Assembly: GCA_038087875.1 (NCBI GenBank)
Contig: CM075994.1
Location: forward strand, 4,030,001 to 4,094,000
Direction: 5' to 3'
DNA: 64,000 bases
Source: Malacoraja senta
Taxonomy: Eukaryota
The position numbers and the translations under genes are program-made. Below, piece after piece: positions 1-63,193 of the stretch (the stretch's first letter is position 1; each line of letters starts with the position of its first letter). The notes beneath the pieces are model-generated. The model saw only the letters and a program-made list of their open reading frames with translations, searched no databases and had not been told where the DNA came from.

Positions 1-906
1 GTTATTAACTCCATGAAACAGGAAGCTCACAACCGTTTCCACGTGCGCACCATTTATGCTGATTTATGTTGATATCCATTGCAGCGATCCAGTAGTTTTC
101 TTTCTCGCTAATTTTCAGACAGACTTACATCTCAGTATCACTGCCACCAATGGCGATCTGCAGAACTTGCCCCACAATAACCTGTCTACTTTCCTAGCCT
201 AAACCAAAGGGCTTAGATCTTTGAACTCTCTCCAGCGCGTTCTGTCTCCCTCGATAAAGCAATATTTCTAACTTAATAATCTTTTTATTCAATACATCTA
301 CTTCTTTACCCTTTTTCGTCACTATCCTTTTTGAACACTTGCTGCTCAGCAGCACATAATATCCAAATCTGCCCATATTTTCTTATGTTGAGCGTGTTTG
401 TTGAGACCGAAGAAGGGTCTCGAACCCAAACGTGACCCACTCGTTCTCTCTAGAGATACTGCCTGTCCCGCTGAGTTACTCCAGCATTTTGTGTCACTTT
501 TTCTTAACCTCGGTAACTTTGAGATTTTCAACAGTCGTTGCAATGACTAATGATACCAACAATTCTTCCTCAACTGTCACTGATCCTGCTCTCACAGACC
601 AGTCAATTGGTTTCCATTTTGTCTTCATTTCCCCAACGAGTATAAACATCATACTCTCCATAATCATTGAGCATGAAAGCCAAATATGGTATTATGTCTT
701 GTATAGGTTGTATTGCCAAAGAAATTGTTTGTTATTTGTGTTGTACAAACTCCTCTAAACTCGATTCGACATAGTTTTAGTATCGCCCACAGTACATACT
801 GACATGGTGCTTCGTTAGGATGGAATATCTATACAACCAATTCGGGGCCTGCAAATACTTACACAGCAGCTCGTCCTTATTTTTAAAACGTTTGTTTTCG
901 CAACAG

Positions 907-933
907 ATAAGAAGCTACAAGAAGTAGAAACAG
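907..933 (+). CDS. micro-exon 27 nt (x)KKLQEVET
   Basis: ttttcgcaacag|ATAAG...AACAG|gtgaac. Confidence 0.8.
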
Positions 934-3900: not shown

Positions 3901-6900
3901 CGAATCTCGATGGTTCGTGACTGCAACTTGCAAATGTGGTGCAAAGAGAAAATTAATATTTTCACTGTTGCTATGTTAAAATAGGCTGTGCTTCAGCCAG
4001 AGCTAATTCGATTAAATCGTGGATCATAACACTAATTAGATATTTGGAACAGTGTTGTCGTTGTTCATATGGAAATGGAAATCTAAGTTCCGAAGTATAC
4101 TGTAATTACACATCGTCATGCAGCAGCATTGGCAAATTCGTTTCAACGTGTTAAGTTCCAATCTGCAGGTTCAATCTGAAGTTAAAATGTTTCTTAAAAC
4201 TTCACAACTGTCAGCCCTGAACAAAGATTAGCAAATATGATGAACACACGTTTCCTTCCAGTATGTTCCTTACCTTTGAGCTCCGTGCTGCGTAGGTTAC
4301 AACCTCATTCGGTAACGATTTTCGTGTTCCACGACCGAATTCGCAGATTAAATCGTGAACATAAGGTAGAATTGGAAGAAAGGCAAAAACTGACTCGCAC
4401 GTGTTTTGGGAAACATAATCATCAAAATACAATCAGCAATACATCACTGCACTAACAGTGTAATCGATTGTCCTCTTTTCAGAACTGCAAAGAATTAGTC
4501 GACGTTTTGGTATGTAATATAGCACGTCCCCTTCTTGAACACTCGATTGCAATAAGATAAATCCCAATCCATCAAACTATCTTACATGCTTATTACAAAC
4601 ATTACTACTCAACATTAAATATGTTTTCGTCGCTTGGATGCAAAATGCTTCAATGTTTGCTGATCTCGATTAATTTGCTATGACCGGTGCAATAATGACA
4701 TTATAATATGGAAACATTTCATTCAACAAATGAATCACTCATAAACATGTTGCTGCATCCGTGGTAATATTCGGTAACGGAAAATAGAACAATGGCATTG
4801 GAAGATGTTTTCCAACCAATGTATATTTCCTGGTTTGTAAATTAGTCACAAAATATTTCACCACTATATGTTCAATGATAAGATTTTTTCCATTTAGACG
4901 TTAAAAATATTTACATCTACGTGGAGAATTGAAACTAGGGATTGTCTACTTATCTTTTAATAATCTATTGATCTATTGCATGCTGCAATTGCAGAGGACA
5001 ATGTTGAAACAAAGATGAGAGGTAAACCTGCTTTCGGTGTGTTTGTTCATCAGTAGCAGACACAAATATTCCATGGGGCCACCAATGAGATCTGCTACCG
5101 AAGGTTGAAGAACTGTGTTATAAGCAGAAAGCTGCAAATCGTAGTTGTGGGGGATAGAGAATAGAGAGAGTGAGCTATGAATCAGCTCAATTTTCCTCAG
5201 AATCGGAATCGGCCAGTGACCTGAGACGTGAACGTTTTGCCTATCGTTGACACATACATAAGTATTTCTATCACTTTCGTTTATTATTTGCCGCAGACAA
5301 TTATTTTGTTATTTTTCTTTGTGAACGTATTAAGAAAATATATATTTCTGGATGTCAAAGTAAAGTTCTGAAACACCCTCTCCGCCCACCATTCTTTATT
5401 TCTCTCAAAGCAAGTTGCAACCGCCCGCTTCATGTGTTTACTTTTCACAGTCTGGAAAGTGCTGTCAGCGTACGACGTTAAACGATGTATCGGAAACATG
5501 GAAAAGTTTCTCCAACAGTTTGCTGACGCTTGTAACTATGTATTTTGTATAAGAAAGATTTATAAACAATAGCCCAGTTTAAATTTCCAGTTTGGAATTC
5601 ATTGACGATTCAGCGTGTTATGATCTCTTGGTTAATTCCTATCAGTCGCAACGCACTCAGCTTAATTTCACATTCCAACAGTTTGAGACTTCCTTTACCA
5701 TCATCCATTGCTGACTTAACCGCCGAACTTCCAAACAGCTGAACGCACCAGCTAAATGCTGAAATTTGAAGATCTGAATCTATGAAATGTACTTGTTCCT
5801 CATTTACAACTTTTTTAAAGTTCCACGTAGGAACAAACGTTTATAGAAGCAACAGGCAGAAAATTATGAACCCTCATTTTATATAAATCGTAAAACAGTA
5901 CTGTTGAAGATCATTAGTCTTTGTAATGTTTTGCAGAAATTGAATCGCTGAATATGGCACTGCAGAGCGTAGGTGAGGCGAAATTTTCTTTAGATAGCTA
6001 AAAAGCAACACTACAAAATTGATTTATACTACGATAAAATGTGAAAATTAAATTGACACTGCATTAAGTCTAGCTATTCACTTTAAATTGCGACTGGATC
6101 TGGAGTAATTAAATCATTACGGTTTAGTATATTAAAGAGACCAAAACTCACATTTTAATCAAACTAGGTTCTGCCATTCAAAAGAATAAAATAACATTTG
6201 TCAATTAATGAATCCGTGCTTCATTAAGCTTCGCAACCTTCTATGAGTTTATTTAGTCCCTCGCCGCAGGATATTTCTGCCCAGCCACTGCACTTAACAA
6301 AGGCGCATGCCATCTTCAACTTACTTCAACATTCTACCTGTAAGACTCAGGCGTGCTATAAGTAGACCTACGGGGAAGATGTCACCAATGATTCTGCACG
6401 CAATCACCAAATACAAAATGAGTGCATTTCAGCCACACAATTGTCTGCGTAATGTGTACCAACACGTTTACTTGTGGCACTTTCAATATTCAAATTGATT
6501 ACATTTCCTTATATCGAGTCATGAATAATAATGTGCTAATCTTAGTCACATTACAGAATCATATACTTTGTTATGCATCGCTTTCCAAATGTTTTTTTCA
6601 ATGCAAACATATGATGCAATAATCTGGTAATCTATCAATATAAAGTAATCGATAATGTCAGCAATTTTAACTAATCGTCACTGTTCCTTCCAAGAAACTA
6701 AATTGCGCCAGAAAGAAGCAGGTGAGTACTCGAAATATATAAAATAATCGTTGTATAATTTGCACCACTTCTTCAAAATGTCTGAATTCATTCATTGTTT
6801 ATAATGATACCTACAATACCTTTATGTCTCTGGGGCAATTGATCGTTGCGACTGTTATACTGTGATATCACTGTAGCTGCAATGTAACAGTGCGTTCGTA

Positions 6901-9900: not shown

Positions 9901-12900
9901 TAGCGAGATAGCGGGTGTAACAGCGAGAGAGATGGGGCAGATGCGAGTGGGAGACCGGAGTGAGCGCGCACACAGACCCGCGCCTCATCCGCAGCCAGGA
10001 TCGAACCCGGGTCCCCAACGCCGCAAGCTCGTTTATTAAAGGTCCTTGTATTATAATATCACACGTCAAAATTTTGAAGTTTTCCAAGGGCGTTACCCTG
10101 CTGTGCGTTCTGACACATGGCAGAATGTATTTAACAAATAAAATGATCAATATAGATTTGGCCACGTGCATCTCAGTTTCATGAAGTTGTGTTCTATTTG
10201 TCAGCTTAGCAATCCAGAAAGCTATCTTCAGAAACATTGAATGATAGCTATGAAATGGATTTAATATTTCCGAAAGGATCAAGCGGAAATTTGGCACTTC
10301 ATGCCGTTTCTCTTCTCATATATTCTAGAGTTGGAAACTCTGCGATCAACTCTGCATGATACAGGTGATTAAGCAAGAAATACTTAACTACTTGTTGTGA
10401 GATCATAATCATGAAATATTATTGGAACCAGTTTATTCCGGTGGCATGACGTCTCTTCAGTTGTTTGACATAACAGTTCAATAATTCCAAGAAACTTCTT
10501 GCTCTTTACATATTTTTTCACATCCTCATAATGCCACGTCACCTTTGTTTGTTCCATGCAGGACCACTGAATAGTCCCATTGCCGAATAGCACAACAGCC
10601 AGAGATCTAGAAAAGCATCGAGACAGTGTAAACTGCAGTTGATAAATCTTGTACCAGAAAAACATGTAATTATTTTGAGATAACCAAACTTGACACCGCA
10701 GGGGGTGATTTTCTGGTTTCGATTGAAATATGGCATCCTCAAGTGAAACAGGAATTTGATATGTGCAGTTTTTTCTCTGGTTGGTCAAATAATACGTGTT
10801 GTATTCCACAAGTATTGTTAATAAACCTCAACATTTTAAGTGTTGTGTGGATGATTTTGATGAATGCGTGAACTGCGTTTTGCTAATTTGGCTGATAACA
10901 TAAAGAAACTTAAGTTAGTGGGAGAAACGTCTGAAAAAAGACTAACTCCGGAAGAAGAGAAAACGTCCCATTTAGCAGGATAGTATTTGACGAAGAATCG
11001 TGCCACGCAAATAGTGATAAACTGCAGTTCCGAGAAGGGTAGTGCTCTGGGTATTCTAATGCGTGACTTCTATACCAGCTATTATGCAGCTGCTTGTATT
11101 TTACGAAGCTAAAATTATGCTACAATATATTGCTCGCGGTATTGAATATGAATCATGGATAGATGCACGGAATCTCTTGTCCAGAGTATGGGAATCGAGG
11201 ACCAGAGGACATAGGTTCAAGATGAAGGGGAAAACATTGAATAGGAATCTGAGGGTTGTAACTTTACAAAAAGTATCACACAAAGGGTTGTGGGTGCATG
11301 GAACAAGCTGCGAGAGGAGGTAGTTGAGGCTGGGACTATCCCAATGTTTAGGAAACAGTGAGACAGGTACATGAATAGGACATGTTTGAAGGGATAAATA
11401 GCAAGCGCAGGGAGGTGGGACTATTGTAGCTGAAACATGTTGGTCGGTGTGGGAATGTTGGGCCGAAGGGCCTGTTTCCACACTGTAGCTCTCTGTGAAT
11501 GTAAAGTCGTAATGTTTCCGATTAATAGCACGTTAGTGAGATAAAATCTGAAGTAACTTATCGAGCTCTTTGTTGGACGATTGATGGAAATGTACTGAAA
11601 GCTGCTCAAGGGAAATTCACTGGACCAATATATCTGTCATAAACCTGATATACGAGAGGTCATTCTGGTATGCCCGGGTATTTAGAACAAAGTGGGGTTG
11701 ATAGAAACAGGTAATATCGTGTCGGGTCTTCAATGAGATTGCAATATATATTTCCTCCAGTTCGAAAATATACATGAATCCATTGCATAATAAGAATGTT
11801 CTGCTTTAATATTGGGATGACGTTAATTATTTATCTCAAGTGTTGCGAATTTTCAGAACTCTCTTTCTCAATAGTCGACCTATGGGATTTAAATATGTGT
11901 AAGCAGCAGAAGAAACGTATTTGATATGCAAGTGCGAAATAGATTTTGCGCATAAACAAGAATCATCAGTTGGCGCAACCGCTCAAGGGGCAGAAGCCCA
12001 TGCCCGCTCATAGTATGTATAGCTATGTAACCTACAATCAGTTGAAACATTGACTTTATTCATTAATGTTGTGGCGTAAGTGCATTGCAAGAAAAAAAAC
12101 CAATAGTCACAATTCCCATAAAAACAATATATCCAATTAACTGACTACAAGCTATTCATGACTAACTCGATCAGAACAGTTCGGTGTAGCACAGCTGTAT
12201 GGATCGCGAGAGCATTGACAGAATGCCCTTCGAGCACATATCTTATCTACGGTGCATCTTTGGAATTTTATTGCAATAACTCCAAACAAGTGGGGGTCGT
12301 AGCTGGAGAAAGATGTCATGCGTCTTACACTTTATTTTACAGTCGTAAAACTGTAACAAAGAAATACTGAAAAATAAGTCATAATTCTGCTCTTCCGATG
12401 AGACAATCTCTGTTATTGGCTGGAAAAAACAAGAGAGCAAAGGCTCGTCGACTTCAAAGCAGCGTTAAAGTTAAACACTGACGCGACCACCCCTCTTGAT
12501 TTATTCAGTCCAAGGCCTCACATCATTGCGGATAAATATAATAGCAAAATTAAACATCATATGTTCATGGGCATAATGTGTTGCGTTGAATATAACTTGA
12601 AAAATATTGCACATATTCAAAGATGACTTGGAAATAGCTGCGTACTTTTCTGCGTGTGCCTTTGGAATGTAAACAATCTCCCTTCGAAATTACTTTCACT
12701 TTTGATCTGTTGATATACAGGTGTTAGAATTACTTCGTCTTATAAATAATGATCTACAAAAAATAGGAGTCGACCTGAGCGGCTTTTAATAAGTAATTAA
12801 ATGCTGATAGTGCAAACATTAATATGAAATAACTCGTTTTTCAATAGAAGCGAAATTGGGCAAAAAAGAAGAAGGTATATTATGCGCAAATTTGGATTAT

Positions 12901-51900: not shown

Positions 51901-54900
51901 TTGACGCCATTTAGATAGTAATCTGCCTTCCTTTTTTTGATACCAAAGTGGATAACATCACATTTATCAACATTAAACTTCATCTCCCATGCTGCTGCCC
52001 ACGCCCCCAACCTGTCCAAGTCACTCTGCATTCTCATAGCATCCTCCTCACAGTTCACACTGCCACCCAGCTTTGTGTCATCTGCAAATTTGCTAATGTT
52101 ATTTTGAATCCCTTCATCCAAATCATTGATGTATATTACAAATAGCTGCGGTCCCAGCACCGAGCCTTGCGGTACCCCACTAGTCACTGACCAAGGAATA
52201 CCGCTTCAGTGCAACGTGATACTGATTTGTTCTGAGCATTCTTCCACTCACTGTGCAAACCCATTTGCAACCAAAACGCTCCAAACCTTTCGTTTAGCAG
52301 ATAACTTTCCTATCAATTGATTCAAACTATTTGCTGTGTTATTATCTCAGCATGTGTATGTGTTTATTTGCAGAAATTAAAGCACTACAGAAATCGAATG
52401 GTATGTATCAACTCAAATATATAATAAGATTATTTTATTTCAACAAAGAAATAAAATCATTCTTTATTTTTATTCAGAAACAGCTCCCAAATGAACGCGC
52501 CCTTCCAAATGTAGACGGTTGCCGTCATTTCAGCTGCCGTCCGATATATCGTGCCCAATTCCCATTATTTGCCTGGTCGTCCCAAAACATCTTTCCTAGA
52601 ATATTGGTTCGGGGCGACGTTTTCTCGCAAAGATATAAAATAATATACTTCAAACTAATTTCTATCTTTTAGCGAAGTCTTACTTGTTTACGGGAATGTA
52701 AAAAAAACATGCCATTAGGTTAATAAGTTCAAGGAGCAGAATAATGTAATTCGGCCCATCCAGCCTACCACGCCAATCAATCACGGCTGATCGATTTCCC
52801 CTCAATCCAATCCTCCTATCCTCTCCATAACCCTTCACATCCTTACTAATCAAGAATCTATCAATCTCCACTTTAAAAAGATTCATTGCTTGGCCTCCAT
52901 GGCCGTCTGTGCAAGTGAATTCCACTTTTTTTCCACACTCTGCCTCAAGCAATTCCTCCTAATCTCCTTTCTAAAGCCACGTCCTGTTCTGAGCTATGGC
53001 CTCTGATTCTAGACTCTCCCACTAGTGGGAACTTCCTCTCCTCATCCAGTCTATCCAGGTTTTTCACTATTCAGTTAGTTTTAATGAGGTTCCCCCTCAT
53101 CCTACTAACTTCCACGGGTACAGGCCCGTTGCCTTGTGTTAACACAATCATTCCTGGAATCATTTTAGTAAACCTCCCCTGCACCAACGACACCACATCC
53201 TCTCTCAGATATGCGGCCCACAACTGCTCACAATACTGGAAATGCGGTCTGAGCAATGTCCTTTAAACCATCAGCAAGACATACGGGATTTTCTATTCCA
53301 GCACTCTCGAAAGAAATGACAGCATTGCATCCACCCTCCTTACTACCGATTCAACTAACAAATTAACTTTGTAGGAATCCTGCACCAGCACTCCCAAGTA
53401 CATTTGCACTTCCGATTTGTGAACTCTCTCTCCCTATTTAGAAAATACTAGACGCCTTTATTCCTACTAACAAAATGCACGACTCCGCGCTTTGCTATGC
53501 TGTATTCCATCTGCCACTTTTCAGCCCACTCTCCGAACCTGTCCAAGTCCTTCTGAAGAGTCCTTACTTTCTCTTAGCTATCTACACCTCCAAATATCTT
53601 AGTGTCATCTGCAAATGTAGCCACAAAGCCTTCTGTTCCCACATCTAAATAATTGATATACCTTGTAATGTCCCCAGCACTGCCCCTTGCGGAACACCAA
53701 TAATTGATATACCTCGTAATGCCCCCAGCACTGCCCCCTGCGGAACACCAATAGTCCTTGGCAGAAAATAGGAAAAAGGTTCCCTTTATTGCCATTCTTT
53801 GCCTTCTGCCATCCAGCCAACATGCTATCCGTGCTTGCATCTTCCTTCTCATATCTTCGGCTTTCATCTTCTTCAGCAGCCTCACGTGCGGCACCTACTC
53901 AAAGGTTTGCTGAAAATCCAGGTAAACCACATCCATTCACTCTTCTTTGTCTATCCTGCTATTTACCTCCTCAAAGAATTCTAACAGGCTCGTCAGGCAA
54001 GATCTCCCTTTCGCAAAACAATGCTAGTTATTTATATTGTCAGATATTTCTGGGAAAGTAGCGTAAGATGTGAACAGAAATTCGGTTTGAAATGGAGCAA
54101 CAACAAATTCCAAATGTGTAGGAAGGACAGGACCCGAAACGCCACCCATTTCTTTTCTCCAGGGATGCTGCGTGCTGAGGTACCCCAGCAATGTGGGTCG
54201 ATCTTAAGTGTATACCAGCATCTGCAGTCCCTTTTACAGTAATCCCGTGAAGTGTCTCGACCCGAAACGTCACCTATTTCTTTTGTCCAGCGATGCTGCC
54301 TGACCCGCTGTGTTACTCCAGCACTTTGAGTCTATCTTCGGTGTTAACGAGCATCTGCAGTTACTTCCTATCAAATTCTGAATGGTCATTTCATTTAAGT
54401 TTATAGCCTTTAAAGACAAATGTTGTCTATTTTCAAATGATGAATTTTATATCGATGAGCTAGCGTCGTCTCCGATCTCTGTTGCTATTTGTGTTATTTA
54501 TCTCGTGGGATCCGCATTCATCCCATATCTCAAAACCGTGCTGGGTGGTTGGTTGGTCGCTGTATTGTTTCCCTGTGGTGATATTTGGCAGGAGCATCTA
54601 AGAGGGTTGGGCTGGTACTTGGGAGATATATCTGAGAGACTTGAATGCGGAAATGTGGTTGTTGCGAATGCTTTAAGTGGCTGTATTTATTTGATGTTCG
54701 GGATAGTCGGCTTCTATATTCTTATAAAGTATGCAATAAGGAAAAGCTCTTGGAGATGCAGCTCGATACAAAATCCATGGAATGTTTTCTACGGGCTCTT
54801 CAAGAATATGCTAATGAATCTATTGCAATCTTAATTATGTGAATGTAGACGATGATTAGAAAGTCAACGGTTAATGTGTATCTTTAATTGTTATTAGACA

Positions 54901-57900
54901 TATTTTAATTATCAGCACAGGCTTCTATTGAGGCAAATTAAACTTTGATTTGAGAAGTAAATGTATGTGGAAACGTTTTAAAAAACCCGAACAACTGATG
55001 TAAGAGTGCTTTCTCTTTTAGAGTTGAAAGAAAACTGCGCAACAGGTGAATTGATTTCCACGTGTTTGTTTTCCAATCCATTCTATTGCGTCTTCCTCGA
55101 ATTGGATCTACAATCTGAAACAAATATGCACCTGTTAATTACTCTGAGATCATGAATGCTATCAATGACTGAATTTTCAGTAAGCGAAAAGCAAATGGAT
55201 TCATCCATAAGTAAATAAAGATCTGAAATCATTTTGGTAGACCATTAACAACATTTCGCATGACATATAACAGTAGAAATCACCGAAGAGCTATAGTTTC
55301 CACAATGCTTATTGCTGTATCTTGTACAGCAATAGAATACAGAATACAGCAACAAACACTGCTATTTGGATATAGCCGTTTCCGTTCAGAATCATGCCAG
55401 CAAGACGAAAGAGTACAAAGCTTTGATCAAAGCAGCACTTGTTATAGATTGGCCAGAATGAACAACAGCAGAACAGTCCAGATGAAACTATCATTGAAAG
55501 AAATTGAGGAAAGTTAGGTCGAACAACTTGAAGATAATGTTGTCACATTCTGAGCGGCACACTAGCGCAACGGTAGAGTTGCTGTCCTACACCGCTGACC
55601 CGCTGAGTTACTCGAGCACTTTGTGTCTATATCTGTTATATACCAGCATCGCCAGTTCCTTTCACTATGTCTTTAACCATTCATAGAAACATAGAAAATA
55701 GGTGCAGGAGGAGGCCATTCGGCCCTTCGAGCCAGCACGGCCATTCATTGTGATCATGGCTGATCGTCCCCAATCAATAACCTGTGCCTGCCTTCTCCCC
55801 ATATCCCTTGACTCCACTAGCCCCTAGAGCTCTATCTAACTCTCTCTTAAATCCATCCAGTGACTTGGCCTCCACTGCCCTCTGTGGCAGGGAGTTCAAT
55901 AAATTCACAACTCTCTGGGTGAAAACGTTTTTTCTCACCTAAGCCTTAAATGACCTCCCCTTTATTCGCCACACAGTTCCGAATGTCTTCGTTAACCAGT
56001 GATATTTAGTGACATTCGAAGTTGGCATAAACAGCTCAAGAACACTGTATCCCAAATATAGTGCTATATGTACGTTTTGTACAAATTTACACGCCGTGTG
56101 ATAAAATGCACAAATAAATCCCTCTTCCCAAAGTAGTTTCTTCTGCGTTTCGAAATGGGAAATAGCCTTTCCCATGCGACTTAAACATTAATGATAAAAT
56201 CCCATTTGACTCGACATTACTCCAAAACATATCCATATAACCATATAACCATATAACCATAACAACACGGAAACAGGCCATCTCGGCCCTTCAAGTCCGT
56301 GCCGAACATTTTATTATTATTATATTTTTTTTAAATTAAAAATAAATACTTCCCCCTAGTCCCATCTACCTGCACTCAGACCATAACCCTCCATTCCTTT
56401 CCCGTCCATATACCCATCCAATCTATTTTTAAAGGAAAACATCGAACCTGCCTTCACCACTTCCACTGGAAGCTCATTCCACACAGCTACCACTCTCTGA
56501 GTAAAGAAGTTCCCCCTAATGTTCCCCCTATACTTCTGTCCCTTAATTCTCAAGTCATGTCCCCTTGTTTGAATCTTCCCTACTCTCAATGGGAACAGCT
56601 TATCCACGTCCACTCTGTCAAACCCGCTCATAATTTTAAAGACCTCTATCAAGTATCGTCATCCTGGAAGCTTCAACTACCAGATCATCGATTACTTTCA
56701 AGAATGATATCCGTCCTCAAACAGACTTTCTGCTCACCTTTTCACAGTTGTCACTGCATGCCATATCCCCACATGTATTTGCCCCCATATCGACAAATCG
56801 CTTACCGTAATTACGAGTAACTGGTTTGCTTACGAGGAGTTAATACACATCTCAAAAGTCGGAAACATAATCCGCTGGATATGCAATCACTAAAATTACT
56901 TATTAGGCTCGAAGCATTCCCATATCAAATAAAAAACTGCGTTTATTATTTCCAGCATAAAGAAAACCGTATAACCCGCCTTCATTACATTCTCTCGGAA
57001 CTCTTACACAACTAACAGGAGGCATCAGCGAACGTCTGCTATTGAGGTCCGGAGATCGTTCGGTAGATTTCATTACCCGTTCTCTCAATGAAGAGTCCCC
57101 AGTTCATGGTAACATTTTGCCTTTCAGGATTATTCACGTCTCTATTTGAGCTCTTTAAGTCTATATCAAAAATCATTCTGCATATGCCTTACTTTTATCG
57201 CTGCGAATGTTATCTTGACGTTCATAATGTGACTACCTGCAGAGCCGGATGAGAATGATTGATCGATCATATATTTCAGACGAAGATAAGCTGTCAGCTA
57301 TTCAAAGAGACATAGGTAAGTTACTCCAATAAAATGTGACATATTTATGGCTAATGTTGAACTTATGGGACTACATTTCAACAAGATGTTCTCAACCCAG
57401 GTGTAATTGACTGAAAGCAAACCATTGCATTATCTTTAATATATCATTTACTTTCATGTTCACAGTGCAACTGTTGCGTCTGAAAGATAAAGGTACAAGT
57501 TATCCGGCCAAACATGATGTTGTGACTAATATTTTGTTATGTGATAAAATAGGACGGATCAAAAATAAGCGGGATATTCCTGATAGAAACAACAGCAAAG
57601 AGGATGCTATAAAATAAAATAATGAAGACACCGAATGAGGAGAAATTGTGATGCGTTTAGTCACAACTTAATTGTTGTGGTTTAAATATAAAAGTGACGT
57701 GACTTGATGATGACAATAAAAGCATTAATAATCAGTAAAACGATGTAATAAAGAGCAGAACTCAAATAAAATAACAATTAACAAGTTGTTCGTTTATACA
57801 CCAGTGTTGACTATCGGTTAAGGGGACATTGGGGGGGGGGGGTGCAGACCCTCATTAGTTCAATGTATCAAATAGGCAAAGAGTATAGTAGAGTGCAAGA

Positions 57901-60900
57901 GGTAGAAACCCTGAAATGATACTGCAATCACTTTAACCTGAGTCGAAAATACACTTAAATTTGAATTAAAAAACAATGAGAATTCCACGGATTTTCATTG
58001 GCTTTGCATTGCTTACAAAGTGGGAGTCGTGAACAGTTCATGCATGATTACCACGGCGGGCGGTGGGGCTGCAACAGTCATTGCTACTACATAAAGAAGT
58101 GTGCAACAAAAGCTCTTAATATAATTTTACATTACTTATATTTATTTTAATTAATGCGCGGGATTTTTTCTTTAGAACTTGAAGAACTTCGTCGACAGAA
58201 TAGTAAGCTATACTATCTGATGATCACAATTTCCACCAACCATTTTCTTTTCCTGTGGTATTCAGAATGACGGTAACGTTGCAGCACTGATATTTATATA
58301 TTTATATATTCCCGTAAATTAGAAAGCACAGTTGAAATTCATGCAAAACGTGAAGTATTGGAATCAATGGCGCAGAATGGAAATGCAAATAAATAATAAC
58401 GTTCAGTTTGTTTTGAGCAGGCTCGTTGAAATAAAACAACATTAGATTCATCAGGTTACATCAATGCAAATTGTCCCAACAAAAAAAACATGTTAGTATT
58501 GATCACAATCAGCATCAGGTAGAAGCTAATGTCATAGTTTGAATTTCAATGGGCCGTAATTTAACTAAATATATCGGAAATTTACCTGGCCAAAGTGCAT
58601 CGACCATAGGGATTGGCTGAGGGGACCAGGGAAGTAAAAGCATGAAAATGCATGTCCGTGTTAATTCCTCGCAGTTGCACCAAATGTTATCAGAGTAACA
58701 ATTCATTAACACGAGCTCGGAAAAGTACTATTCATTTTTTTAAATGTGCTGCATTTTTGATGTTTTCTTTCAGGTAGATCCGTGCAGGAATGCGGTAAGA
58801 ACGCAAAACCAAATCAAAGATAAATATAATTTCAAACTGAGACTTCCTCTGTGCGTCGTTTAACTGTCCGCTTACATATTTTCAGAGAAAGAACTTTATG
58901 CAGCCAAATCAGGCACGTAAATATAAAATGACTTGGAAGACTTACAAAATGTAATTTCCGACAAAATGCAACAACAGACAACAGACAATAGACAATAGGT
59001 GCAGGAGGATCCCAGTCGGCCCTTCGAGCCAGCATCGCCATTCAATGTGATCATGGCTGATCATCCCCAATCAGTACCCCGTTCCTGCCTTCGGTTCGCA
59101 AGCCACGAGAACACATCCCAGACAATAACCATTACCGTGATTTTATTTAATTCGACTGATAGATGTTGTCTCACGATCTACAGAATATCACCAGGGACAA
59201 TAATTAAGCACAAGCAACTATAGCACTATTCCCAGATTTTTTTTCCCCAAGAAAAATATTGTTCAAATATAAAAATTGTCCCCTTTTGGTTTTCATGATA
59301 TATATTTCAATCATCCAATCCTGGAGTGCAGCATACGCAGCGCAATCGATACGCAAACACCTGAAATCAGACTTATGCAGATAACGTTGTGTAACCGGAA
59401 GAAAAATGTCATTGGCACAACGTCTAATAAGAACTGACGGAACATTTCTCCTCTGCTGTATGAATGTATTGCGATTGTCGTGTTATCCGAATTATAGTAG
59501 TAACATATATGGGGAAACATATCATTTTATCAGTTAATTAAAATTAAGGAGCAGCGGTATTGAATTCCAAATGGAAGCTATGAAAATTATTGTTTTGTAA
59601 TTTCAGAACTTGAAACTATTAAATCTGCGCTGAAGTCAGCAAGTAAGGGATTTCTTCTCCTGATGGTTGCGGAAATTTAAACCCAAAATACGTGGAAAGT
59701 CGGGATATCTGTGGAGAATTAATATGCATCTGAGAGGGAATTGGTTACAGAGAAAATACAGAACGAATTAAATGAGAGATTGATTTGAGAGATAGCATCA
59801 AAACAATGGGCGGCAAAGCATCATTCCATGCCGTTAGGAAATTAAACGACGAAATCGCAAATCTTTGAATTCATCTACAGCTTGCCTGAAGTGCAATATC
59901 AATAAAAAATGACAAACCTTCAGTATATGAACTTTTTGATGGAGTCTAATAAATGACAACTAATTGTATAATCCCTCATCGTCAAAACGCCCACTAATGG
60001 TCGACATGCTCTCTTCGCAAATAAAAAATAATGTGTCAGAAACGAAACGAAAACTGAATTTTGAATTCAGAAACTATATATTCGCATTATATGCAGAAAA
60101 TCTACATTTATCGGGTTAACCTATTCGTCCAGAATTTCTTCCACGTCATTGTCGAGGTAGATATATATGTCATCTAATACTATGCCAACATCTATTACTA
60201 TTGGCAGAACGTGGCTGATATCCGTTGTGCGGCCCATATTAACATATTTTACATTCATCGTTGTATTTTCCAAGACCTAACATTTCCATGGGTTCTTCAA
60301 AAATGTGCCCCTGATAGAGCAGGGGTTCCCAACATTTTTCGTCCGGTTTACCCTGGCAACCTTAATAGCACATAACATTGTTATTTCACTTATTTATGCG
60401 CAATTAATGATGAACATATACCAGAACCAAACACTGTCAGTCAATGAGAAAAAATATGTACAAAATCCAGAATCAACAAATTTTTAACCTGGGTAGGCGA
60501 AACTTACCGCATGGGGTTAATATTTACCCCAGGTTGGGAGCCCTTTTGATAGAGAAACAAAAGGTATGCCACTCCAATTGACTGCGTACAACTATGTTGA
60601 GTAATTAATGAATAAAAGGTTAAATCTGTCTTGGTTAAACTGGATATGAGAAATAGGGAGAAGAGTGCGGAACAAATTATATGCATTGTCAAGCAGCGCT
60701 CTTGTTTTACCCATGGAAAACCTGTCTAATTTAACTGGAGTGAACTCTGGTATTTTTGTATCGCACCTCTAAATCCTTTTTATTTTATTCTTCAATGTAA
60801 AGGAAAATGCTCAGAATACGTACTAACGTCGACATTTTATCCCAAAAGAGACTGATTTGCAAGTCAAAGAGGATGGTAATTAACACTAATACAGTTTTAA

Positions 60901-63193
60901 ATGCTATTTAAATGCTAATTTGGATCTATAACATTCACATTTTTGCAAGCTAAAAGTTGACCAAAATGTATTTGTTGGCATTTTCAACTCAGAACTTCAG
61001 AAACATGTAAAGAGCGATGGTGAGTGACAACAACATACCGCACGATTTTTCGCTGATTCATCTTGAAAAATGCCGAAACAGGCCTGCTGAAGCAACAAAT
61101 GTACATATTATTGCGACTCAATTCACCTCATTTGAAAGTTATTAAAATGTTGGAGACAGATAAGCCAATTTAGACAATGCCAAATGTCCCACTCCCCAGC
61201 CTTTCAGGGTAACATACCTATCGATGTTTCACGATCTTAAAATCCACAGGCCCCGCTGTTGCAGATTCGATCCCCGGCAAAGGGATCGCAAGCTCCGCGA
61301 TGTTAAAGTCCCACAGACTCCCGCGGCTTGGAGCGCCGGGTCAGTCTCGAGGAAAGGTCGCCAACTCCACGATGTTAGGCCGTAGTGCGGACGGAGATAC
61401 GATACGGAAAATAATCGCATCTCCGTCGAGGTAAGAGAGTGAAAAAAGTTTCCCCCAATCTCCCCCCCCCCCCCCGCACACCCCCCCAACATAAAACCAA
61501 CCAAGGTACACTAAAACATAATTTAACACTACCTTAAAATAACAAAACCATAAGAAAGGACAGACATTGGTGAGGCAGCCATTGCTGGTGGCGCCACTGG
61601 CGCAGTATTAAATCACCCATATTCTTTGCAACAGCGCCGCTTCCAATATTCTGCTAAGTGATAGCCTGTGATGGCATTCTAATACACGTATTGTCAGAAG
61701 ATTTTTTTTTTGTTCCATGCCAATCTTGCGCATGGTCAGATGGACTACATTTAAGTAAATATCGAAAAGCGAATATGAGGGAAAAGAAGAGACAAGACCA
61801 CGACATAAGAAATCTTGTGCTCAACTGCAGGAGAAGGGAATAAATGAATAACAAAGATAAGAACAGTATGACATTTCAACTTTGTCGTTGTTGCTTAATG
61901 CAAGTTGTTTCAATTTTTATACGTTGCAGAGGAACAGATACGTGAAACACAAGAGGGTAAAACAATTCGTTTTTATCAATTTTCAACCATCGTTTCTGTG
62001 GCTGGTATGAATGTAGAACAAATGCTGTGAAGAAATGCTGCCATTGTGTCAGTGTCAGACAAAAGTGTTTTATGAAGGACCCGTCATGAACATAGTGGAA
62101 TGCGAGGAAGCATTGAGGGACTGGGTGAGCTATTCCTGGTGCCTGCGATCTTGCACTTTCCTATGCAATTAAAATTATTCTTACAATGTCATTGGGCTGA
62201 ATGATAAGCGGCTGTTCTGTGGCGAGTTGTCGATTATCTGCACTGCTCATCAGAATGGACAAGACATTCAGCATCGCACCGAACACAATTGAATTTCAAA
62301 CCACGTGCGAGGACAAATGTCGACGCACGCGGTCAGTATCCCTGCCGGTTGATTTTTTTTTCTAAGATCTAATTCCGAAAGCTGAAAGCACGGAAACTAC
62401 CCTCTTCCCCAGCCTCTCCGCAGCCAGGCCACATTATGTTAATTGAGTTCACTCGACTACAGTTAAATATAAATATATGTGTATTATAATTCACATAATG
62501 GTTTAATCTACCAACATATATAATGACCGTCCTTTAAAAAAAGTGAGATGTTTTCTTTAGCTGAAATATTCAAATTATTTAAGTATTGTTCAATCGAATA
62601 TGTTTGCAAAGGACTTCAGACAAAGGCATGAGGTTTCTGCCTGTTAAGGCCTGATCAACTGCGTTCTGTTACTCCTCGCGTCAGGCCATAGCACTGCACA
62701 TCACTTGAGAATTCCACGGCTGAAATAAGATCATTTTACGATCGTTTTCAGTCTTATTTTTTAATAATAAATATTTAATTTATCGTAAAAATTGCAAGAG
62801 GTACACTTTTTCTACAGGGACAAACACACATTTGATTGGCACTTTAAATGTTACCATTGACCTAATAGATAACGATGATATATTTCCTAGAACGTAAGAA
62901 AATAGAAGCGATTCGACTGAACGTTGGTAAGAACACTGATTTCCCATGTATTTTATTGCTTTGGTTATTTACGTGAAAGCAATTCCCATTGTTTTATCGA
63001 TTAATCTAAGCTCCAACCGCATTTTCAAATAGACGCAATTTCACTAAATAACTGAGTCAAACGATCACAACTAAAATCCTTTTGTGCATTGCGCAATCAC
63101 TGATCTATGATATTATGAAATATTATTGAAAATATAACATGTAAAACTCTGCCTCTTATATTGTAGAGGAACTACTCCGTCGGCAGGAAACAG
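907..63193 (+). CDS. Internal part of a multi-micro-exon gene encoding a long coiled-coil protein (46 phase 1-1 exons of 18-36 nt, about 438 aa; both ends outside the window)
   Basis: Manual splice-site reading. Each exon has a pyrimidine tract plus AG, a GT donor, a length divisible by 3 and an open phase-1 frame. The joined peptide begins DKKLQEVET-ELRDLKEKIKVS and ends ERKKIEAIRLNV-EELLRRQET, with heptad-like Leu/Ile spacing. Confidence 0.9.
1800..1835 (+). CDS. micro-exon 36 nt ELRDLKEKIKVS
   Basis: gatttttag|AACTA...ATCAG|gtaaga. Confidence 0.88.
2361..2387 (+). CDS. micro-exon 27 nt ADGSLQAKF
   Basis: cttctttcag|CGGAT...ATTCA|gtaagt. Confidence 0.88.
3200..3223 (+). CDS. micro-exon 24 nt METLMQMK
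   Basis: ttctttctttag|TGGAA...GAAAG|gtcaga. Confidence 0.7.
4483..4509 (+). CDS. micro-exon 27 nt ELQRISRRF
   Basis: tcctcttttcag|AACTG...TTTTG|gtatgt. Confidence 0.85.
4995..5021 (+). CDS. micro-exon 27 nt EDNVETKMR
   Basis: aattgcag|AGGAC...GAGAG|gtaaac. Confidence 0.8.
5937..5972 (+). CDS. micro-exon 36 nt EIESLNMALQSV
   Basis: gttttgcag|AAATT...CGTAG|gtgagg. Confidence 0.88.
6695..6721 (+). CDS. micro-exon 27 nt ETKLRQKEA
   Basis: ttccttccaag|AAACT...AGCAG|gtgagt. Confidence 0.88.
6917..6943 (+). CDS. micro-exon 27 nt ELDTKCKTP
   Basis: cattttag|AACTG...TCCTG|gtgagt. Confidence 0.85.
7450..7670 (-). mobile_element. decayed tRNA-derived SINE
   Basis: similar to 34130-34320. Confidence 0.6.
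8315..8341 (+). CDS. micro-exon 27 nt DERTTDLRN
   Basis: tttttgccgcgcag|ATGAA...AAACG|gtaaaa. Confidence 0.8.
8525..8551 (+). CDS. micro-exon 27 nt ELDQLRQSN
   Basis: ttttttaaaaacag|AACTT...CAATA|gttagt; paralogous to exon 58176. Confidence 0.8.
9054..9080 (+). CDS. micro-exon 27 nt KDMLEKKDK
   Basis: tatttctgcag|AGGAT...CAAAG|gtaagt. Confidence 0.9.
10329..10364 (+). CDS. micro-exon 36 nt ELETLRSTLHDT
   Basis: tattctag|AGTTG...TACAG|gtgatt. Confidence 0.85.
11155..11495 (+). mobile_element. CR1 3' end fragment
   Basis: ESRTRGHRFKMKG; tail gggccgaagggcctgtttcc. Confidence 0.85.
13013..13039 (+). CDS. micro-exon 27 nt DQHEQCSIN
   Basis: attctttag|ATCAG...CAATG|gtgagt. Confidence 0.85.
13477..13494 (+). 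CDS. micro-exon 18 nt AQSLNV
   Basis: tttattttcag|CACAA...CGTGG|gtaaga. Confidence 0.75.
14627..14653 (+). CDS. micro-exon 27 nt ENETLQIKL
   Basis: cttgcttacag|AAAAT...ACTCG|gtaatg. Confidence 0.8.
14960..15280 (-). mobile_element. decayed CR1 3' end
   Basis: degenerate FTQNVASAGNAL, FKRILER. Confidence 0.65.
17636..17659 (+). CDS. micro-exon 24 nt ELKSKLKA
   Basis: catctccag|AATTG...GGCCG|gtaagc. Confidence 0.82.
19019..19054 (+). CDS. micro-exon 36 nt GEEGKDLAAKCI (or 9-nt GEE using the internal donor at 19028)
   Basis: atttacag|GAGAAGAAG|gtaagg, or extended to ...TATAG|gtacag. Confidence 0.7.
   Translation, partial: EKKVRTWLLNV
19195..19220 (+). other. 26-nt exon-like unit, 1 nt short (xLNFLLGQI if one base is restored)
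   Basis: tgtttgcag|GTTGA...GATCA|gtaagt; as written it gives GGT TGA (stop). Confidence 0.5.
20010..20323. mobile_element. partial PIF/Harbinger-like MITE
   Basis: CGACC/GGTCG-rich internal repeats; terminus AAGTGGGACAGG; other end missing. Confidence 0.55.
20813..20830 (+). CDS. tentative micro-exon 18 nt (x)KCWRL
   Basis: gctgac...tgcatttag|TTAAA...ACTAA|gtatgt; weak pyrimidine tract; not counted among the 46. Confidence 0.35.
   Translation, partial: LNVGD
21068..22163 (+). mobile_element. CR1-type LINE, 5'-truncated (RT C-terminus and 3' UTR)
   Basis: PQRSVLGPQIFTIYIN, KFVDDTKLGG; (TTCTATGT)n tail. Confidence 0.93.
22626..24201 (+). mobile_element. Tc1/mariner DNA transposon, full length, transposase disrupted
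   Basis: TA flanks at 22624-25 and 24202-03; TIR CAGTGCATTCAGAAAGTATTCAG / CTGAATACTTTCTGAACGGACGG; peptide remnants MKTKEL, ETKIELFG, VKHGGGSIM, FQSDNYPKHT, WPSQNTDLNSIEHL with frameshifts and stops. Confidence 0.95.
24675..25100. mobile_element. Penelope-type terminal repeats in inverted arrangement (non-autonomous element)
   Basis: arm 24675-24770 is the reverse complement of arm 24966-25060; motif CTGAAGAAGGGTCTCGACCCGAAAC; other copies near 405-495, 30180-30265, 31786-31880, 38760-38835, 48825-48880, 54120-54370 and 55590-55670. Confidence 0.75.
25649..25675 (+). CDS. micro-exon 27 nt (E/K)CKELLQKT
   Basis: tttttctttaag|AATGC...GACAA|gtaagt. Confidence 0.88.
26696..26722 (+). CDS. micro-exon 27 nt MRQILLKNA
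   Basis: ttgctttcag|TGCGA...TGCAG|gtaaat. Confidence 0.88.
27777..27812 (+). CDS. micro-exon 36 nt EIIQLQTKIKEA
   Basis: ctcttttctag|AAATT...AGCAT|gtgagc. Confidence 0.85.
28050..29100 (-). mobile_element. very decayed Gypsy-like pol/integrase remnant
   Basis: minus-strand remnants only loosely resemble integrase motifs; many stops. Confidence 0.3.
29240..29435 (+). mobile_element. SINE 3' portion
   Basis: gctggtcggcgtggactcggtggg...taaactaaactaaac. Confidence 0.75.
29875..29892 (+). CDS. micro-exon 18 nt SDSRIP
   Basis: ttatgccag|CGGAT...TCCAG|gtacag. Confidence 0.6.
31087..31119 (+). CDS. micro-exon 33 nt GSFNRDDEPFN
   Basis: ctctgac...tttcgttctcaacag|GCTCA...CAATG|gtaatg. Confidence 0.55.
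31434..31460 (+). CDS. micro-exon 27 nt ECKKLLQAS
   Basis: ttcttatcag|AATGC...GAGCA|gtgagt; paralogous to 25649. Confidence 0.9.
32262..32288 (+). CDS. micro-exon 27 nt MRQLLVKDI
   Basis: ttctctcgcag|TGAGA...TATCG|gtgagt; paralogous to 26696. Confidence 0.9.
32558..33737 (-). mobile_element. CR1-type LINE, 5'-truncated
   Basis: KFADDTKLGG, YRALVRSHLEYCVQFWSP; (TCTATTG)n tail. Confidence 0.95.
34035..34320 (-). mobile_element. tRNA-derived SINE
   Basis: B-box-like GGTTCGATCCC on the minus strand; (TAAAC)n tail; related copies at 7450-7670, 29240-29435, 36030-36200 and 49500-49650. Confidence 0.85.
34434..35484. mobile_element. non-autonomous DNA transposon, 1051 bp
   Basis: TIR TAGCAATGTTACAA / TTGTAACATACCTA; direct repeat AATGTAG on both sides. 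Confidence 0.85.
36660..36695 (+). CDS. micro-exon 36 nt EIGKLNARVQDA
   Basis: ctgttacag|AAATA...TGCTG|gtaagc. Confidence 0.88.
37373..37399 (+). CDS. micro-exon 27 nt EEGLRAKDA
   Basis: atcttacag|AGGAA...TGCAG|gtaaaa. Confidence 0.85.
37500..37745 (+). mobile_element. decayed CR1 RT fragment
   Basis: aagtttgtggatgatccgaagataggtgg resembles KFADDTKIGG. Confidence 0.65.
39415..39440 (+). other. 26-nt exon ELESLIMTK, 1 nt short of the expected 27 nt
   Basis: ctttcctctctcag|AACTG...CTAAG|gtaatc; occupies the third slot of a 36-27-27-27 module. Confidence 0.75.
39625..39850 (+). mobile_element. decayed CR1 3' end
   Basis: tttttcacacagacggtcgtg resembles FFTQRVV. Confidence 0.55.
40110..40875 (-). 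mobile_element. decayed CR1 internal fragment (endonuclease/linker region)
   Basis: reverse-complement similarity to 42953-43700. Confidence 0.7.
41235..41261 (+). CDS. micro-exon 27 nt (V)SDLRRKEQ
   Basis: ctcttttacag|TGAGC...ACAAG|gtaaat. Confidence 0.88.
41556..41591 (+). CDS. micro-exon 36 nt EIEKLKKSLQDA
   Basis: gatttcag|AAATA...CGCAG|gtgagt. Confidence 0.9.
42953..45495 (+). mobile_element. CR1-type LINE ORF2 (partial endonuclease, RT, 3' UTR), frameshifted
   Basis: EPTREKAILHLV, GSDHNML, NYRPVSLTSVVGKMLE, DFQKAFDKVPH, FADDTKLGG. Confidence 0.96.
45559..45585 (+). CDS. micro-exon 27 nt ESVVRKKDT
   Basis: catttgcag|AATCT...TACAG|gtaata. Confidence 0.85.
46010..46640 (-). mobile_element. 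nested, decayed non-CR1 LINE 3' ends
   Basis: (GATTCA)n and (TAA)n tails followed by tttatt, typical of antisense LINE termini. Confidence 0.45.
47476..48310 (-). repeat. retroelement 3' end with (TATCG)n tail plus GC-rich interspersed repeat
   Basis: microsatellite tail at 47476-47497; GC-rich body; a related GC-rich repeat lies at 61230-61600. Confidence 0.6.
48404..48430 (+). CDS. micro-exon 27 nt DMSDHLKTD
   Basis: tattacag|ATATG...CGATG|gtgagt; paralogous to 60993. Confidence 0.88.
49006..49032 (+). CDS. micro-exon 27 nt DEKLKEAKT
   Basis: branch site TACTAAC at 48981; tttttcttacag|ACGAG...AACGG|gtagga. Confidence 0.9.
49780..49815 (+). CDS. micro-exon 36 nt ELEQLEAIRADI
   Basis: tatttccag|AACTC...TATCG|gtgagt. 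Confidence 0.9.
49977..50003 (+). CDS. micro-exon 27 nt EKLLRMKDA
   Basis: ttttcatag|AGAAA...TGCCG|gtaaac. Confidence 0.85.
51163..52190 (-). mobile_element. CR1-type LINE, 5'-truncated
   Basis: SGVPQGSVLGPQLFVIYINDLD, FADDTKLGG; same tail as the 32558 copy. Confidence 0.95.
52374..52400 (+). CDS. micro-exon 27 nt EIKALQKSN
   Basis: tttatttgcag|AAATT...GAATG|gtatgt. Confidence 0.88.
52700..54020 (-). mobile_element. older CR1-type LINE fragment with an internal ~50-bp tandem duplication (53650-53752)
   Basis: FADDTKIFGG, LRPHFQYCEQLW. Confidence 0.85.
55022..55045 (+). CDS. micro-exon 24 nt ELKENCAT
   Basis: ttctcttttag|AGTTG...AACAG|gtgaat. Confidence 0.82.
55682..55965 (-). mobile_element. 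CR1 3' end fragment
   Basis: near-identical to the reverse complement of 45230-45490. Confidence 0.9.
56233..56652 (-). mobile_element. CR1 3' end, different subfamily
   Basis: IEVFKIMSGFDRVD, TRGHDLRI, FFTQRVVAVWNELP; (ATGGTTAT)n tail. Confidence 0.88.
57280..57315 (+). CDS. micro-exon 36 nt DEDKLSAIQRDI
   Basis: atatttcag|ACGAA...CATAG|gtaagt. Confidence 0.9.
   Translation, partial: TKISCQLFKET
57466..57492 (+). CDS. micro-exon 27 nt VQLLRLKDK
   Basis: tgttcacag|TGCAA...TAAAG|gtacaa. Confidence 0.85.
58176..58202 (+). CDS. micro-exon 27 nt ELEELRRQN
   Basis: ttttctttag|AACTT...GAATA|gtaagc. Confidence 0.88.
58774..58794 (+). CDS. micro-exon 21 nt SRSVQEC
   Basis: ttttctttcag|GTAGA...ATGCG|gtaaga. 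Confidence 0.78.
58975..59090 (-). mobile_element. CR1 3' UTR/tail fragment
   Basis: matches 51163-51270. Confidence 0.85.
59607..59642 (+). CDS. micro-exon 36 nt ELETIKSALKSA
   Basis: aatttcag|AACTT...AGCAA|gtaagg. Confidence 0.88.
60320..60546. mobile_element. hAT (Charlie-like) MITE
   Basis: TIR CAGGGGTTCCCAAC / GTTGGGAGCCCTTT; 8-bp TSD TGATAGAG. Confidence 0.88.
60849..60875 (+). CDS. micro-exon 27 nt KTDLQVKED
   Basis: branch site TACTAAC at 60821; ttatcccaaaag|AGACT...GGATG|gtaatt. Confidence 0.82.
60993..61019 (+). CDS. micro-exon 27 nt ELQKHVKSD
   Basis: ttcaactcag|AACTT...CGATG|gtgagt. Confidence 0.88.
61230..61600 (-). repeat. GC-rich interspersed repeat
   Basis: shares gctccgcgatgtt and poly-C/A-rich architecture with 47930-48310. 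Confidence 0.55.
61930..61956 (+). CDS. micro-exon 27 nt EEQIRETQE
   Basis: acgttgcag|AGGAA...AGAGG|gtaaaa. Confidence 0.82.
62891..62926 (+). CDS. micro-exon 36 nt ERKKIEAIRLNV
   Basis: tatttcctag|AACGT...CGTTG|gtaaga; paralogous to 49780. Confidence 0.88.
63167..63193 (+). CDS. micro-exon 27 nt EELLRRQET
   Basis: atattgtag|AGGAA...AACAG|gtacga; paralogous to 49977. Confidence 0.85.

What the first reader, a model, noticed from the sequence alone, without database searches (positions are those of the whole stretch)
4483..63193. Exon lengths encode coiled-coil register: alternating A and B exons give 21-aa and 18-aa units
Seen: A-type exons start E-[LI]-x-x-L (36 or 27 nt) and mostly alternate with 27-nt B-type exons (xxx-L-xx-K-[DE]-x). 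A36+B27 is 21 aa, exactly three heptads (core positions 2,5,9,12,16,19,23). A27+B27 is 18 aa, a heptad plus a hendecad (one stutter). Inference: the splice unit that keeps helical register is the exon pair. Skipping one exon keeps the reading frame but shifts the hydrophobic stripe, so pairwise co-skipping would be predicted.
Basis: inference. Interest (0 to 1): 0.7.

Follow-up and report, generated by a model that had tools for sequence, protein, structure and literature searches.

The report
Mini-exon array encoding a helical rod
About forty tiny coding pieces of 27 or 36 letters, spread over 62 kb of a skate gene, spell a long charged helical rod whose greasy stripe is locked to the exon borders; the exon-pair arithmetic is correct, but the genome itself breaks the pair rule in several places.

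Summary
The exons are real. On the + strand, 43 candidate mini-exons (29 of 27 nt, 10 of 36 nt, three of 24, one of 26) run from 907 to 63193, all phase 1/1; I count 37 as solid. Splice-only selection gives 17 candidates of 27 nt on + and 2 on -. Of 23 such candidates, 22 are open in phase 1, against 12 in each other frame. The two exon classes alternate at 31 of 42 junctions (shuffles reach at most 29).

In the ten 36+27 pairs, 37 of 56 LIVMF residues sit on one heptad register, at positions 2, 5, 9, 12 and 16.

The pair is not a strict unit:
- Three-exon (30-aa) units are about as common as four-exon (39-aa) units.
- One A-type exon is 26 nt and breaks the frame.
- One 36-nt exon ends in T and makes a stop with the next exon.
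- Heptad order fades beyond one heptad.

Co-skipping could not be tested because there is no RNA. Searches and folds of the joined product were left out by rule, so the gene is unnamed.

The scan noted the same kind of array before on other DNA of this genome (s1-179733, s1-203272).

The parts
907..933 (+). first exon seen in the window, 27 nt, B type
   Evidence: Splice scores 6.9/5.5. Open only in phase 1.
1800..5021 (+). unit 1: five exons
   Evidence: Exons: 1800-1835 (36, A); 2361-2387 (27, B-like with Leu and Lys one residue late, ends in A); 3200-3223 (24, doubtful, weak donor); 4483-4509 (27, A); 4995-5021 (27, B)..
5937..9080 (+). unit 2: six exons
   Evidence: Exons: 5937-5972 (36, A); 6695-6721 (27, strict B); 6917-6943 (27, weak A, ends with Pro); 8315-8341 (27, class unclear); 8525-8551 (27, A, ends in A); 9054-9080 (27, strict B)..
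10329..17659 (+). unit 3: five exons, degenerate 3' part
   Evidence: Exons: 10329-10364 (36, A); 12848-12874 (27, strict B); 13013-13039 (27, no hydrophobic pattern); 14627-14653 (27, weak); 17636-17659 (24, doubtful)..
25649..27812 (+). unit 4: three exons after an 8-kb repeat-filled intron
   Evidence: Exons: 25649-25675 (27, weak A); 26696-26722 (27, B); 27777-27812 (36, A). The last is the only exon ending in T..
31434..32288 (+). unit 5: two exons resembling the first two of unit 4
   Evidence: Exons: 31434-31460 (27, weak A); 32262-32288 (27, strict B). Joining 27812 to 31434 reads T|AA, a stop. Joining 27812 to 32262 reads T|TG, Leu..
36660..41261 (+). unit 6: four exons, one broken
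   Evidence: Exons: 36660-36695 (36, A); 37373-37399 (27, strict B); 39415-39440 (26 nt, A type, one base short, shifts the frame); 41235-41261 (27, strict B).
41556..49032 (+). unit 7: four exons, 39 aa
   Evidence: Exons: 41556-41591 (36, A); 45559-45585 (27, strict B); 48404-48430 (27, weak A); 49006-49032 (27, B)..
49780..55045 (+). unit 8: three solid exons, 30 aa
   Evidence: Exons: 49780-49815 (36, A, core at 2, 5, 8, 12); 49977-50003 (27, strict B, intron 161 nt); 52374-52400 (27, A); 55022-55045 (24, doubtful)..
57280..58202 (+). unit 9: three exons, 30 aa
   Evidence: Exons: 57280-57315 (36, core at 5, 8, 12); 57466-57492 (27, strict B, intron 150 nt); 58176-58202 (27, A, ends in A). 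No B-type exon was found before the next 36-nt exon.
59607..61956 (+). unit 10: four exons, 39 aa
   Evidence: Exons: 59607-59642 (36, A); 60849-60875 (27, strict B); 60993-61019 (27, weak A, intron 117 nt); 61930-61956 (27, B)..
62891..63193 (+). unit 11, cut by the window end
   Evidence: Exons: 62891-62926 (36, core at 5, 8, 12); 63167-63193 (27, B, intron 240 nt)..
49755..49779 (+). conserved intron stretch just before a 36-nt exon
   Evidence: The motif ATATATT, then 1-5 pyrimidines, then AG has 5 hits on +. Four are the acceptors of the 36-nt exons at 10329, 49780, 57280 and 62891. About 25 nt upstream align in three of these modules, while the rest of the introns do not. Other copies: 10318-10328, 57269-57279, 62878-62890.

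Best explanation
This is a stretch of a real protein-coding gene on the + strand; both ends lie outside the window.

Its product is a long, Glu/Lys/Leu-rich alpha-helical rod, most likely a coiled coil with frequent register breaks. It is built from phase-1/phase-1 mini-exons.

The array grew by old duplications of a multi-exon unit of 36-27-27-27 nt (39 aa). That unit is often reduced to 36-27-27 nt (30 aa).

Because whole units were copied, every exon border sits at a fixed place in the local heptad pattern:
- A exons give core residues 2, 5, 9 and 12.
- B exons give one core Leu at residue 4, followed by a conserved Arg, Lys and Asp/Glu.
- The split junction codon G|AR puts Glu at the first residue of most exons.

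The 36+27 pair adds up to three heptads and the 27+27 pair to a stutter. I read this as a consequence of the repeat's history and of selection on the helix, not as a demonstrated splicing rule.

Shown: the exons, the phase, the classes, the alternation and the local register.

Inferred: helix and coiled coil, duplication history, and expression.
For: Length peaks at 27 and 36 nt occur on + only.

22 of 23 splice-selected candidates are open in phase 1, against 12 of 23 in each other frame.

The strict B motif occurs 10 times on + and 0 times on -.

Among paralogous exons, codon position 2 is the most conserved (0.51-0.57) and position 3 is at intron level (0.36-0.37 for the A36 and B/D27 classes; 0.44 for C27).

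Introns are not alignable between units, so the copies are old, yet lengths and motifs are kept.

Alternation holds at 31 of 42 junctions.

37 of 56 LIVMF residues lie in one heptad register in the 36+27 pairs.

Lag-7 hydrophobic autocorrelation is 0.24 and is reached by 0 of 1000 shuffles of residues or of exon order.

The composition favours a helix: E 15.5%, K 14.9%, L 14.1%, G 0.8%, P 0.3%.

27 of 43 exons begin with Glu and 36 of 43 end in G.
Against: I had no RNA and no cross-species evidence.

The joined product could not be searched, scored by a coiled-coil predictor or folded.

Heptad order does not persist: autocorrelation at lags 14, 21 and 28 is 0.05, 0.07 and 0.00.

A 3/4-step threading needs about one discontinuity per 16 residues.

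Three of eleven expected core positions per 39 aa are conserved polar residues: Lys, Asn/Asp, Lys.

Full inclusion of all exons is impossible, because of one 26-nt exon and one junction stop.

Several exons in the 5' half lack the pattern.
Confidence: 0.6

Rival explanations
1. The exon pair is the regulated splice unit, and A and B neighbours are included or skipped together so that the hydrophobic stripe stays in register. Rod length would then be tuned in steps of 21 or 18 residues.
For: All exons are symmetric in phase 1, so any skip keeps the frame.

Pairs sum to 21 or 18 aa and single exons shift the register by 2 or 5.

Three 36-nt exons are tied to their B partner by introns of only 150-240 nt and share a conserved acceptor motif.

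The broken 26-nt exon and the T-ending exon show that some skipping must occur.
Against: Three-exon units leave an A27 exon without a partner at 52374 and 58176, and no hidden B exon was found there.

Equally short introns (117-195 nt) tie B27 exons to the A27 of the next pair.

The partner exons of the broken 26-nt exon are intact with strong sites.

No expression data were available.
Confidence: 0.2
2. The product is not a self-associating coiled coil. It is a single amphipathic helix or a weakly supercoiled rod that lies along another polymer. Its 39-residue unit, made of two unequal halves (21 + 18), would play the part of tropomyosin's 39-40-residue pseudo-repeat of two 19-20-residue bands.
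For: Four-exon units are 39 aa.

Eleven core positions per 39 residues give 3.55 residues per turn, close to a straight helix.

Conserved surface charges recur once per unit.

Tropomyosin pseudo-repeats of 39-40 residues target successive actin subunits (PMC4714992).
Against: Only about three or four of nine units are 39 aa.

Autocorrelation at lag 39 is about zero, while lag 30 gives 0.25.

No sequence comparison with tropomyosin was possible.
Confidence: 0.1
3. The array is a decaying, unexpressed gene remnant.
For: There is one frameshifting 26-nt exon and one junction stop.

Several exons lack the hydrophobic pattern or carry Pro or Cys, mostly between 6900 and 17700.

The introns are full of interspersed repeats.
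Against: About forty AG/GT pairs are still intact.

22 of 23 candidates are open in the right phase.

Codon position 2 is conserved above intron level.

The motifs are kept although the introns have diverged beyond alignment.
Confidence: 0.1

Closest known systems
[quoted passage not shown]
   Same: Exon sizes follow the helical repeat. The exons encode 7, 14 or 21 aa, and a pair of exons was duplicated as a unit, lengthening a coiled-coil interface (PMC10152394).
   Different: There each exon is a whole number of heptads and only a few exons are involved. Here single exons are 9 or 12 aa, only pairs reach 21 aa, and there are about forty exons.
Collagen and tropoelastin type genes (from my own knowledge, not tested here)
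   Same: These are long arrays of short symmetric exons whose lengths are multiples of the structural repeat (multiples of 9 nt in collagens). In non-fibrillar collagens and elastin a codon is split after its first base, G.
   Different: There is no Gly-X-Y pattern here; Gly is 0.8% of residues. The period is heptad-like, not a triplet.
Schistosome micro-exon genes
   Same: Very short symmetric exons are separated by long introns (exons of 3-81 bp, introns up to 5 kb; PMC10526429).
   Different: Those encode small secreted, mostly disordered proteins of flukes. This is a vertebrate array encoding a regular charged helix.
Tropomyosin
   Same: It is a charged helical rod with a 39-40-residue super-period made of two bands of 19-20 residues (PMC4714992).
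   Different: Tropomyosin has unbroken heptads and ordinary exons. Here the register breaks often and the 39-aa unit is not uniform.
Other micro-exon rod loci of this genome (s1-179733, s1-203272)
   Same: They have the same 27/36-nt exon lengths and a 21-residue repeat, according to earlier notes of this scan.
   Different: I did not examine them. One lies 932 kb downstream on the other strand and the other on a different piece.

Membership tests
heptad coiled coil | hydrophobic residues at a and d positions (3,4 spacing) | tested here: met
   37 of 56 LIVMF residues fall on one register in the 36+27 pairs (p = 6.5e-9). Lag-7 autocorrelation is 0.24.
heptad coiled coil | register kept over many heptads | tested here: not met
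   Autocorrelation at lags 14, 21 and 28 is 0.05, 0.07 and 0.00. Threading finds 12 discontinuities in 189 aa.
heptad coiled coil | call by a trained predictor or an oligomer model | not testable with these tools
collagen-type exon array | exon lengths in multiples of 9 nt with a codon split after G | tested here: met
   There are 29 exons of 27 nt and 10 of 36 nt, and 36 of 43 end in G.
collagen-type exon array | Gly at every third residue | tested here: not met
   Gly is 0.8% of residues.
tropomyosin | uniform 39-40-residue pseudo-repeat | tested here: inconclusive
   Units of 39 aa and 30 aa are mixed. Lag-39 autocorrelation is about zero.
tropomyosin | sequence match to the family profile | not testable with these tools
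   Exons of 9-12 aa are below every tool's minimum length, and the joined query is barred.
schistosome-type micro-exon gene | symmetric micro-exons between long introns | tested here: met
   All exons are phase 1/1. Introns are 117-7989 nt with a median of 924.
schistosome-type micro-exon gene | small secreted protein with a signal peptide | not tested
   The gene ends lie outside the window.

The most novel reading that the evidence does not exclude
The array is a splicing-programmable rod. Inclusion of a 36+27 pair adds three in-register heptads, a 27+27 pair adds a stutter, and an unpaired 27-nt exon adds a hard register break. Exon choice would then set both the length of a coiled coil and the positions of its hinges. 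Junction codons (a T-ending exon) and a frame-breaking exon would enforce which combinations are allowed.
Probability: 0.15. Interest if true: 0.75.

Novelty: new variant of a known kind. Interest (0 to 1): 0.42.

Why it matters
Arrays of short symmetric exons are known for collagens, elastin, titin PEVK and mucins. I found no paper describing one for a coiled-coil-like rod in which single exons are fractions of a heptad.

If the exons are alternatively used, the locus would be a natural system for asking how register breaks are tolerated or exploited in long helical rods. If they are constitutive, it is a tidy example of duplication history fixing intron positions relative to a structural repeat.

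In both cases these exons are invisible to ORF-based annotation, and this genome has several such loci.

Tried and rejected
- Global Fourier analysis of hydrophobicity over the whole chain gave only a weak peak (best period 3.40-3.44). Exon-order shuffles beat it 5-14 times in 300. Phase slips destroy long-range coherence, so I turned to local tests.
- Two 3/4-step threadings were sensitive to the scoring scheme and showed many discontinuities. I use them only qualitatively.
- In-silico single and pair skips did not separate clearly by threading score.
- BLAST of exon flanks, and alignments of the introns, found no homology between units apart from a short stretch at the acceptor.
- A search for hidden B-type exons between 52400-57280 and 58202-59607 found none.
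- A TGC motif upstream of the acceptors is not enriched: 14 of 43 exons against 26% of control sites.
- Rfam gave no hit.
- Pfam gave nothing for the four ORFs of 150 aa or more.
- Tandem repeats are only short ones inside introns.
I redid it from coordinates.

Full report
**What is there**

The window is AT-rich vertebrate-type DNA (GC 0.34-0.44). It has no long ORFs of known family and no Rfam hit, and it holds many interspersed repeats. Earlier notes of this scan call the genome a skate; I did not verify that. I do not take the contig for human.

On the + strand I find a chain of 43 candidate mini-exons from 907 to 63193. There are 29 of 27 nt, 10 of 36 nt, three of 24 nt and one of 26 nt. 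I count 37 as solid. Introns run from 117 to 7989 nt, with a median of 924. The gene continues beyond both ends of the window.

**Are the exons real?**

- I selected candidates with criteria that use no training on these exons: YAG preceded by a pyrimidine tract, and GTR with two further consensus matches.
- Under those criteria, 27-nt AG...GT intervals occur 17 times on + and 2 times on -. The 36-nt intervals occur 6 times against 1. All other lengths average 1.7.
- Of the 23 intervals chosen this way, 22 are open in phase 1 and only 12 in each other frame.
- A strict B-type motif between AG and GT occurs 10 times on + and never on -.
- Among exons of one class, codon position 2 is the best conserved (0.51-0.57 pairwise identity). 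Position 3 sits at the level of the flanking introns for the A36 and B/D27 classes (0.36-0.37); it is 0.44 for C27.
- The introns of different units cannot be aligned. The copies are therefore old, and the kept lengths, phases and motifs point to selection on a protein.
- The exons are purine-rich (65% against 50% elsewhere). The product is 15.5% Glu, 14.9% Lys, 14.1% Leu, 0.8% Gly and 0.3% Pro.

**Classes and order**

- The 36-nt exons mostly start E-[LI]-x-x-[LI] and carry hydrophobic residues at 2, 5, 9 and 12.
- The 27-nt exon after them has Leu at 4, Arg at 5, Lys at 7 and Asp/Glu at 8.
- A second kind of 27-nt exon again starts E-L-x-x-L and tends to end in Asn. It is followed by another B-like exon.
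- By a fixed rule, A-like and B-like exons alternate at 31 of 42 junctions. Shuffled orders average 19 and never exceed 29 in 20000 trials.
- The recurring genomic unit is 36-27-27-27 nt (39 aa: 41556-49032, 59607-61956, and 36660-41261 if its broken exon is counted). The alternative is 36-27-27 nt (30 aa: 49780-52400, 57280-58202, and 27777 with 31434 and 32262).
- 27 of 43 exons begin with Glu, because the split codon is G|AA or G|AG. 36 of 43 exons end in G.

**The register claim**

- In the ten 36+27 pairs, 37 of 56 LIVMF residues fall on positions equal to 2 or 5 modulo 7. The expected number is 16 (p = 6.5e-9), and the next best register holds 24. So the pair does carry one continuous heptad frame, fixed relative to the exon borders.
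- Five of the six core places are hydrophobic. The sixth, position 19, never is; it is a conserved Lys.
- The junction from a B exon into the next A exon keeps a spacing of seven.
- The natural exon order lifts the lag-7 hydrophobic autocorrelation to 0.24, against 0.11 for shuffled exon orders (0 of 1000 reach it).
- The 27+27 pairs are less regular: LIVMF at positions 2, 5/6 and 13 only. They are compatible with the heptad-plus-hendecad reading but do not prove it.

**Where the pair rule fails**

- Heptad order does not persist. Lags 14, 21 and 28 give 0.05, 0.07 and 0.00, lag 39 gives about zero, and lag 30 gives 0.25.
- Threading a 3/4 ladder through the product needs roughly one discontinuity per 16 residues.
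- Two intact A27 exons (52374 and 58176) are followed directly by a 36-nt exon. A search for hidden B exons in those introns found none.
- The shortest introns tie 36-nt exons to their B partner in three units (150, 161 and 240 nt). They tie B exons to the following A27 exon just as often (117, 138 and 195 nt).
- Exon 39415-39440 is A-type but only 26 nt long, so including it shifts the frame. Both flanking B exons are intact.
- Exon 27777-27812 is the only exon ending in T. Joined to 31434 it makes TAA; joined to 32262 it makes a Leu codon. These two exons therefore cannot both be in a productive message.
- It follows that some skipping must occur, or these exons are dead. The sequence alone does not say whether skipping goes by pairs.

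**A subfamily**

The 36-nt exons at 49780, 57280 and 62891 have their core at 5, 8 and 12. Each has a B partner with a Leu-Leu-Arg centre close behind. They share about 25 nt of intron just before the acceptor.

The motif ATATATT, then pyrimidines, then AG occurs five times on the + strand. Four of those hits are acceptors of 36-nt exons. This may be residual homology or a splicing signal.

**What it most likely is**

It is a segment of a gene for a long charged helical rod that grew by duplication of multi-exon units. The copying history and selection on the helix fix each intron at a set place in the local heptad pattern.

The pair as a functional splice unit remains a hypothesis, and the genome offers as much against it as for it.

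**Comparison with known cases**

- The nearest precedents are exon arrays that follow a structural repeat.
- In plant MIKC K-domains, exons encode 7, 14 or 21 aa and an exon pair was duplicated (PMC10152394).
- In collagens and elastin, short symmetric exons carry a codon split after G (my own knowledge).
- Schistosome micro-exon genes share the gene anatomy (PMC10526429).
- The 39-aa unit of two unequal halves recalls tropomyosin's 39-40-residue pseudo-repeat of two bands (PMC4714992), but the unit is not uniform here.
- Four literature searches for a coiled-coil micro-exon array found nothing relevant.
- The scan has noted the same kind of array at two other places in this genome.

**Limits**

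- These exons encode 8-12 residues, below the minimum of every search tool. No homology search, family scan, solved-structure search or structure prediction of the product was therefore made. The joined step was left out.
- Register statistics on the conceptual product were computed locally from window coordinates only.
- No RNA data and no other vertebrate genome were available. Expression, splicing pattern, conservation and the gene's name all remain open.

Noticed in passing
window 39415-39440 (+): An A-type exon with good splice sites is 26 nt instead of 27. If included, it shifts the frame and the next exon opens with a stop. It is either a dead exon, an obligatorily skipped one, or a one-base assembly error.
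   Followed up: partly
window 27777-27812 and 31434-31460 (+): The only exon ending in T is followed by an exon starting AA, so the junction reads TAA. Skipping to 32262 gives a Leu codon. The two exons look mutually exclusive through their junction codon. Exons 25649/26696 and 31434/32262 are similar pairs.
   Followed up: partly
window 10318-10328, 49768-49779, 57269-57279, 62878-62890 (+): A shared acceptor-proximal motif (ATATATT, pyrimidines, AG) marks four of the ten 36-nt exons. There is one other hit on + (46707-46719) and three on -. About 25 nt upstream align in three modules although the rest of the introns do not.
   Followed up: partly
window 21069-22094, 44477-45475 (direct); 32573-33547, 51153-52189, 55684-55983 (inverted to these): Five copies of an interspersed repeat about 1 kb long, 74-95% alike, lie in both orientations inside the introns. 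ORFs of 150-173 aa in or near them have no Pfam match.
   Followed up: partly
window 409-489, 24973-25053, 31788-31868, 54246-54326, with inverted copies near 24678-24772 and 31819-31883: A short dispersed element of about 81 nt (62-86% identity) occurs several times. It is probably a SINE-like repeat.
   Followed up: no
window 53648-53753: A 51-nt unit repeated 2.1 times in tandem (94% match) lies inside an intron.
   Followed up: no
window 6722-6916, 12875-13012, 60876-60992: Very short introns (195, 138 and 117 nt) join a B-type exon to the following A27-type exon in three units. The 117-nt one is a multiple of three.
   Followed up: no
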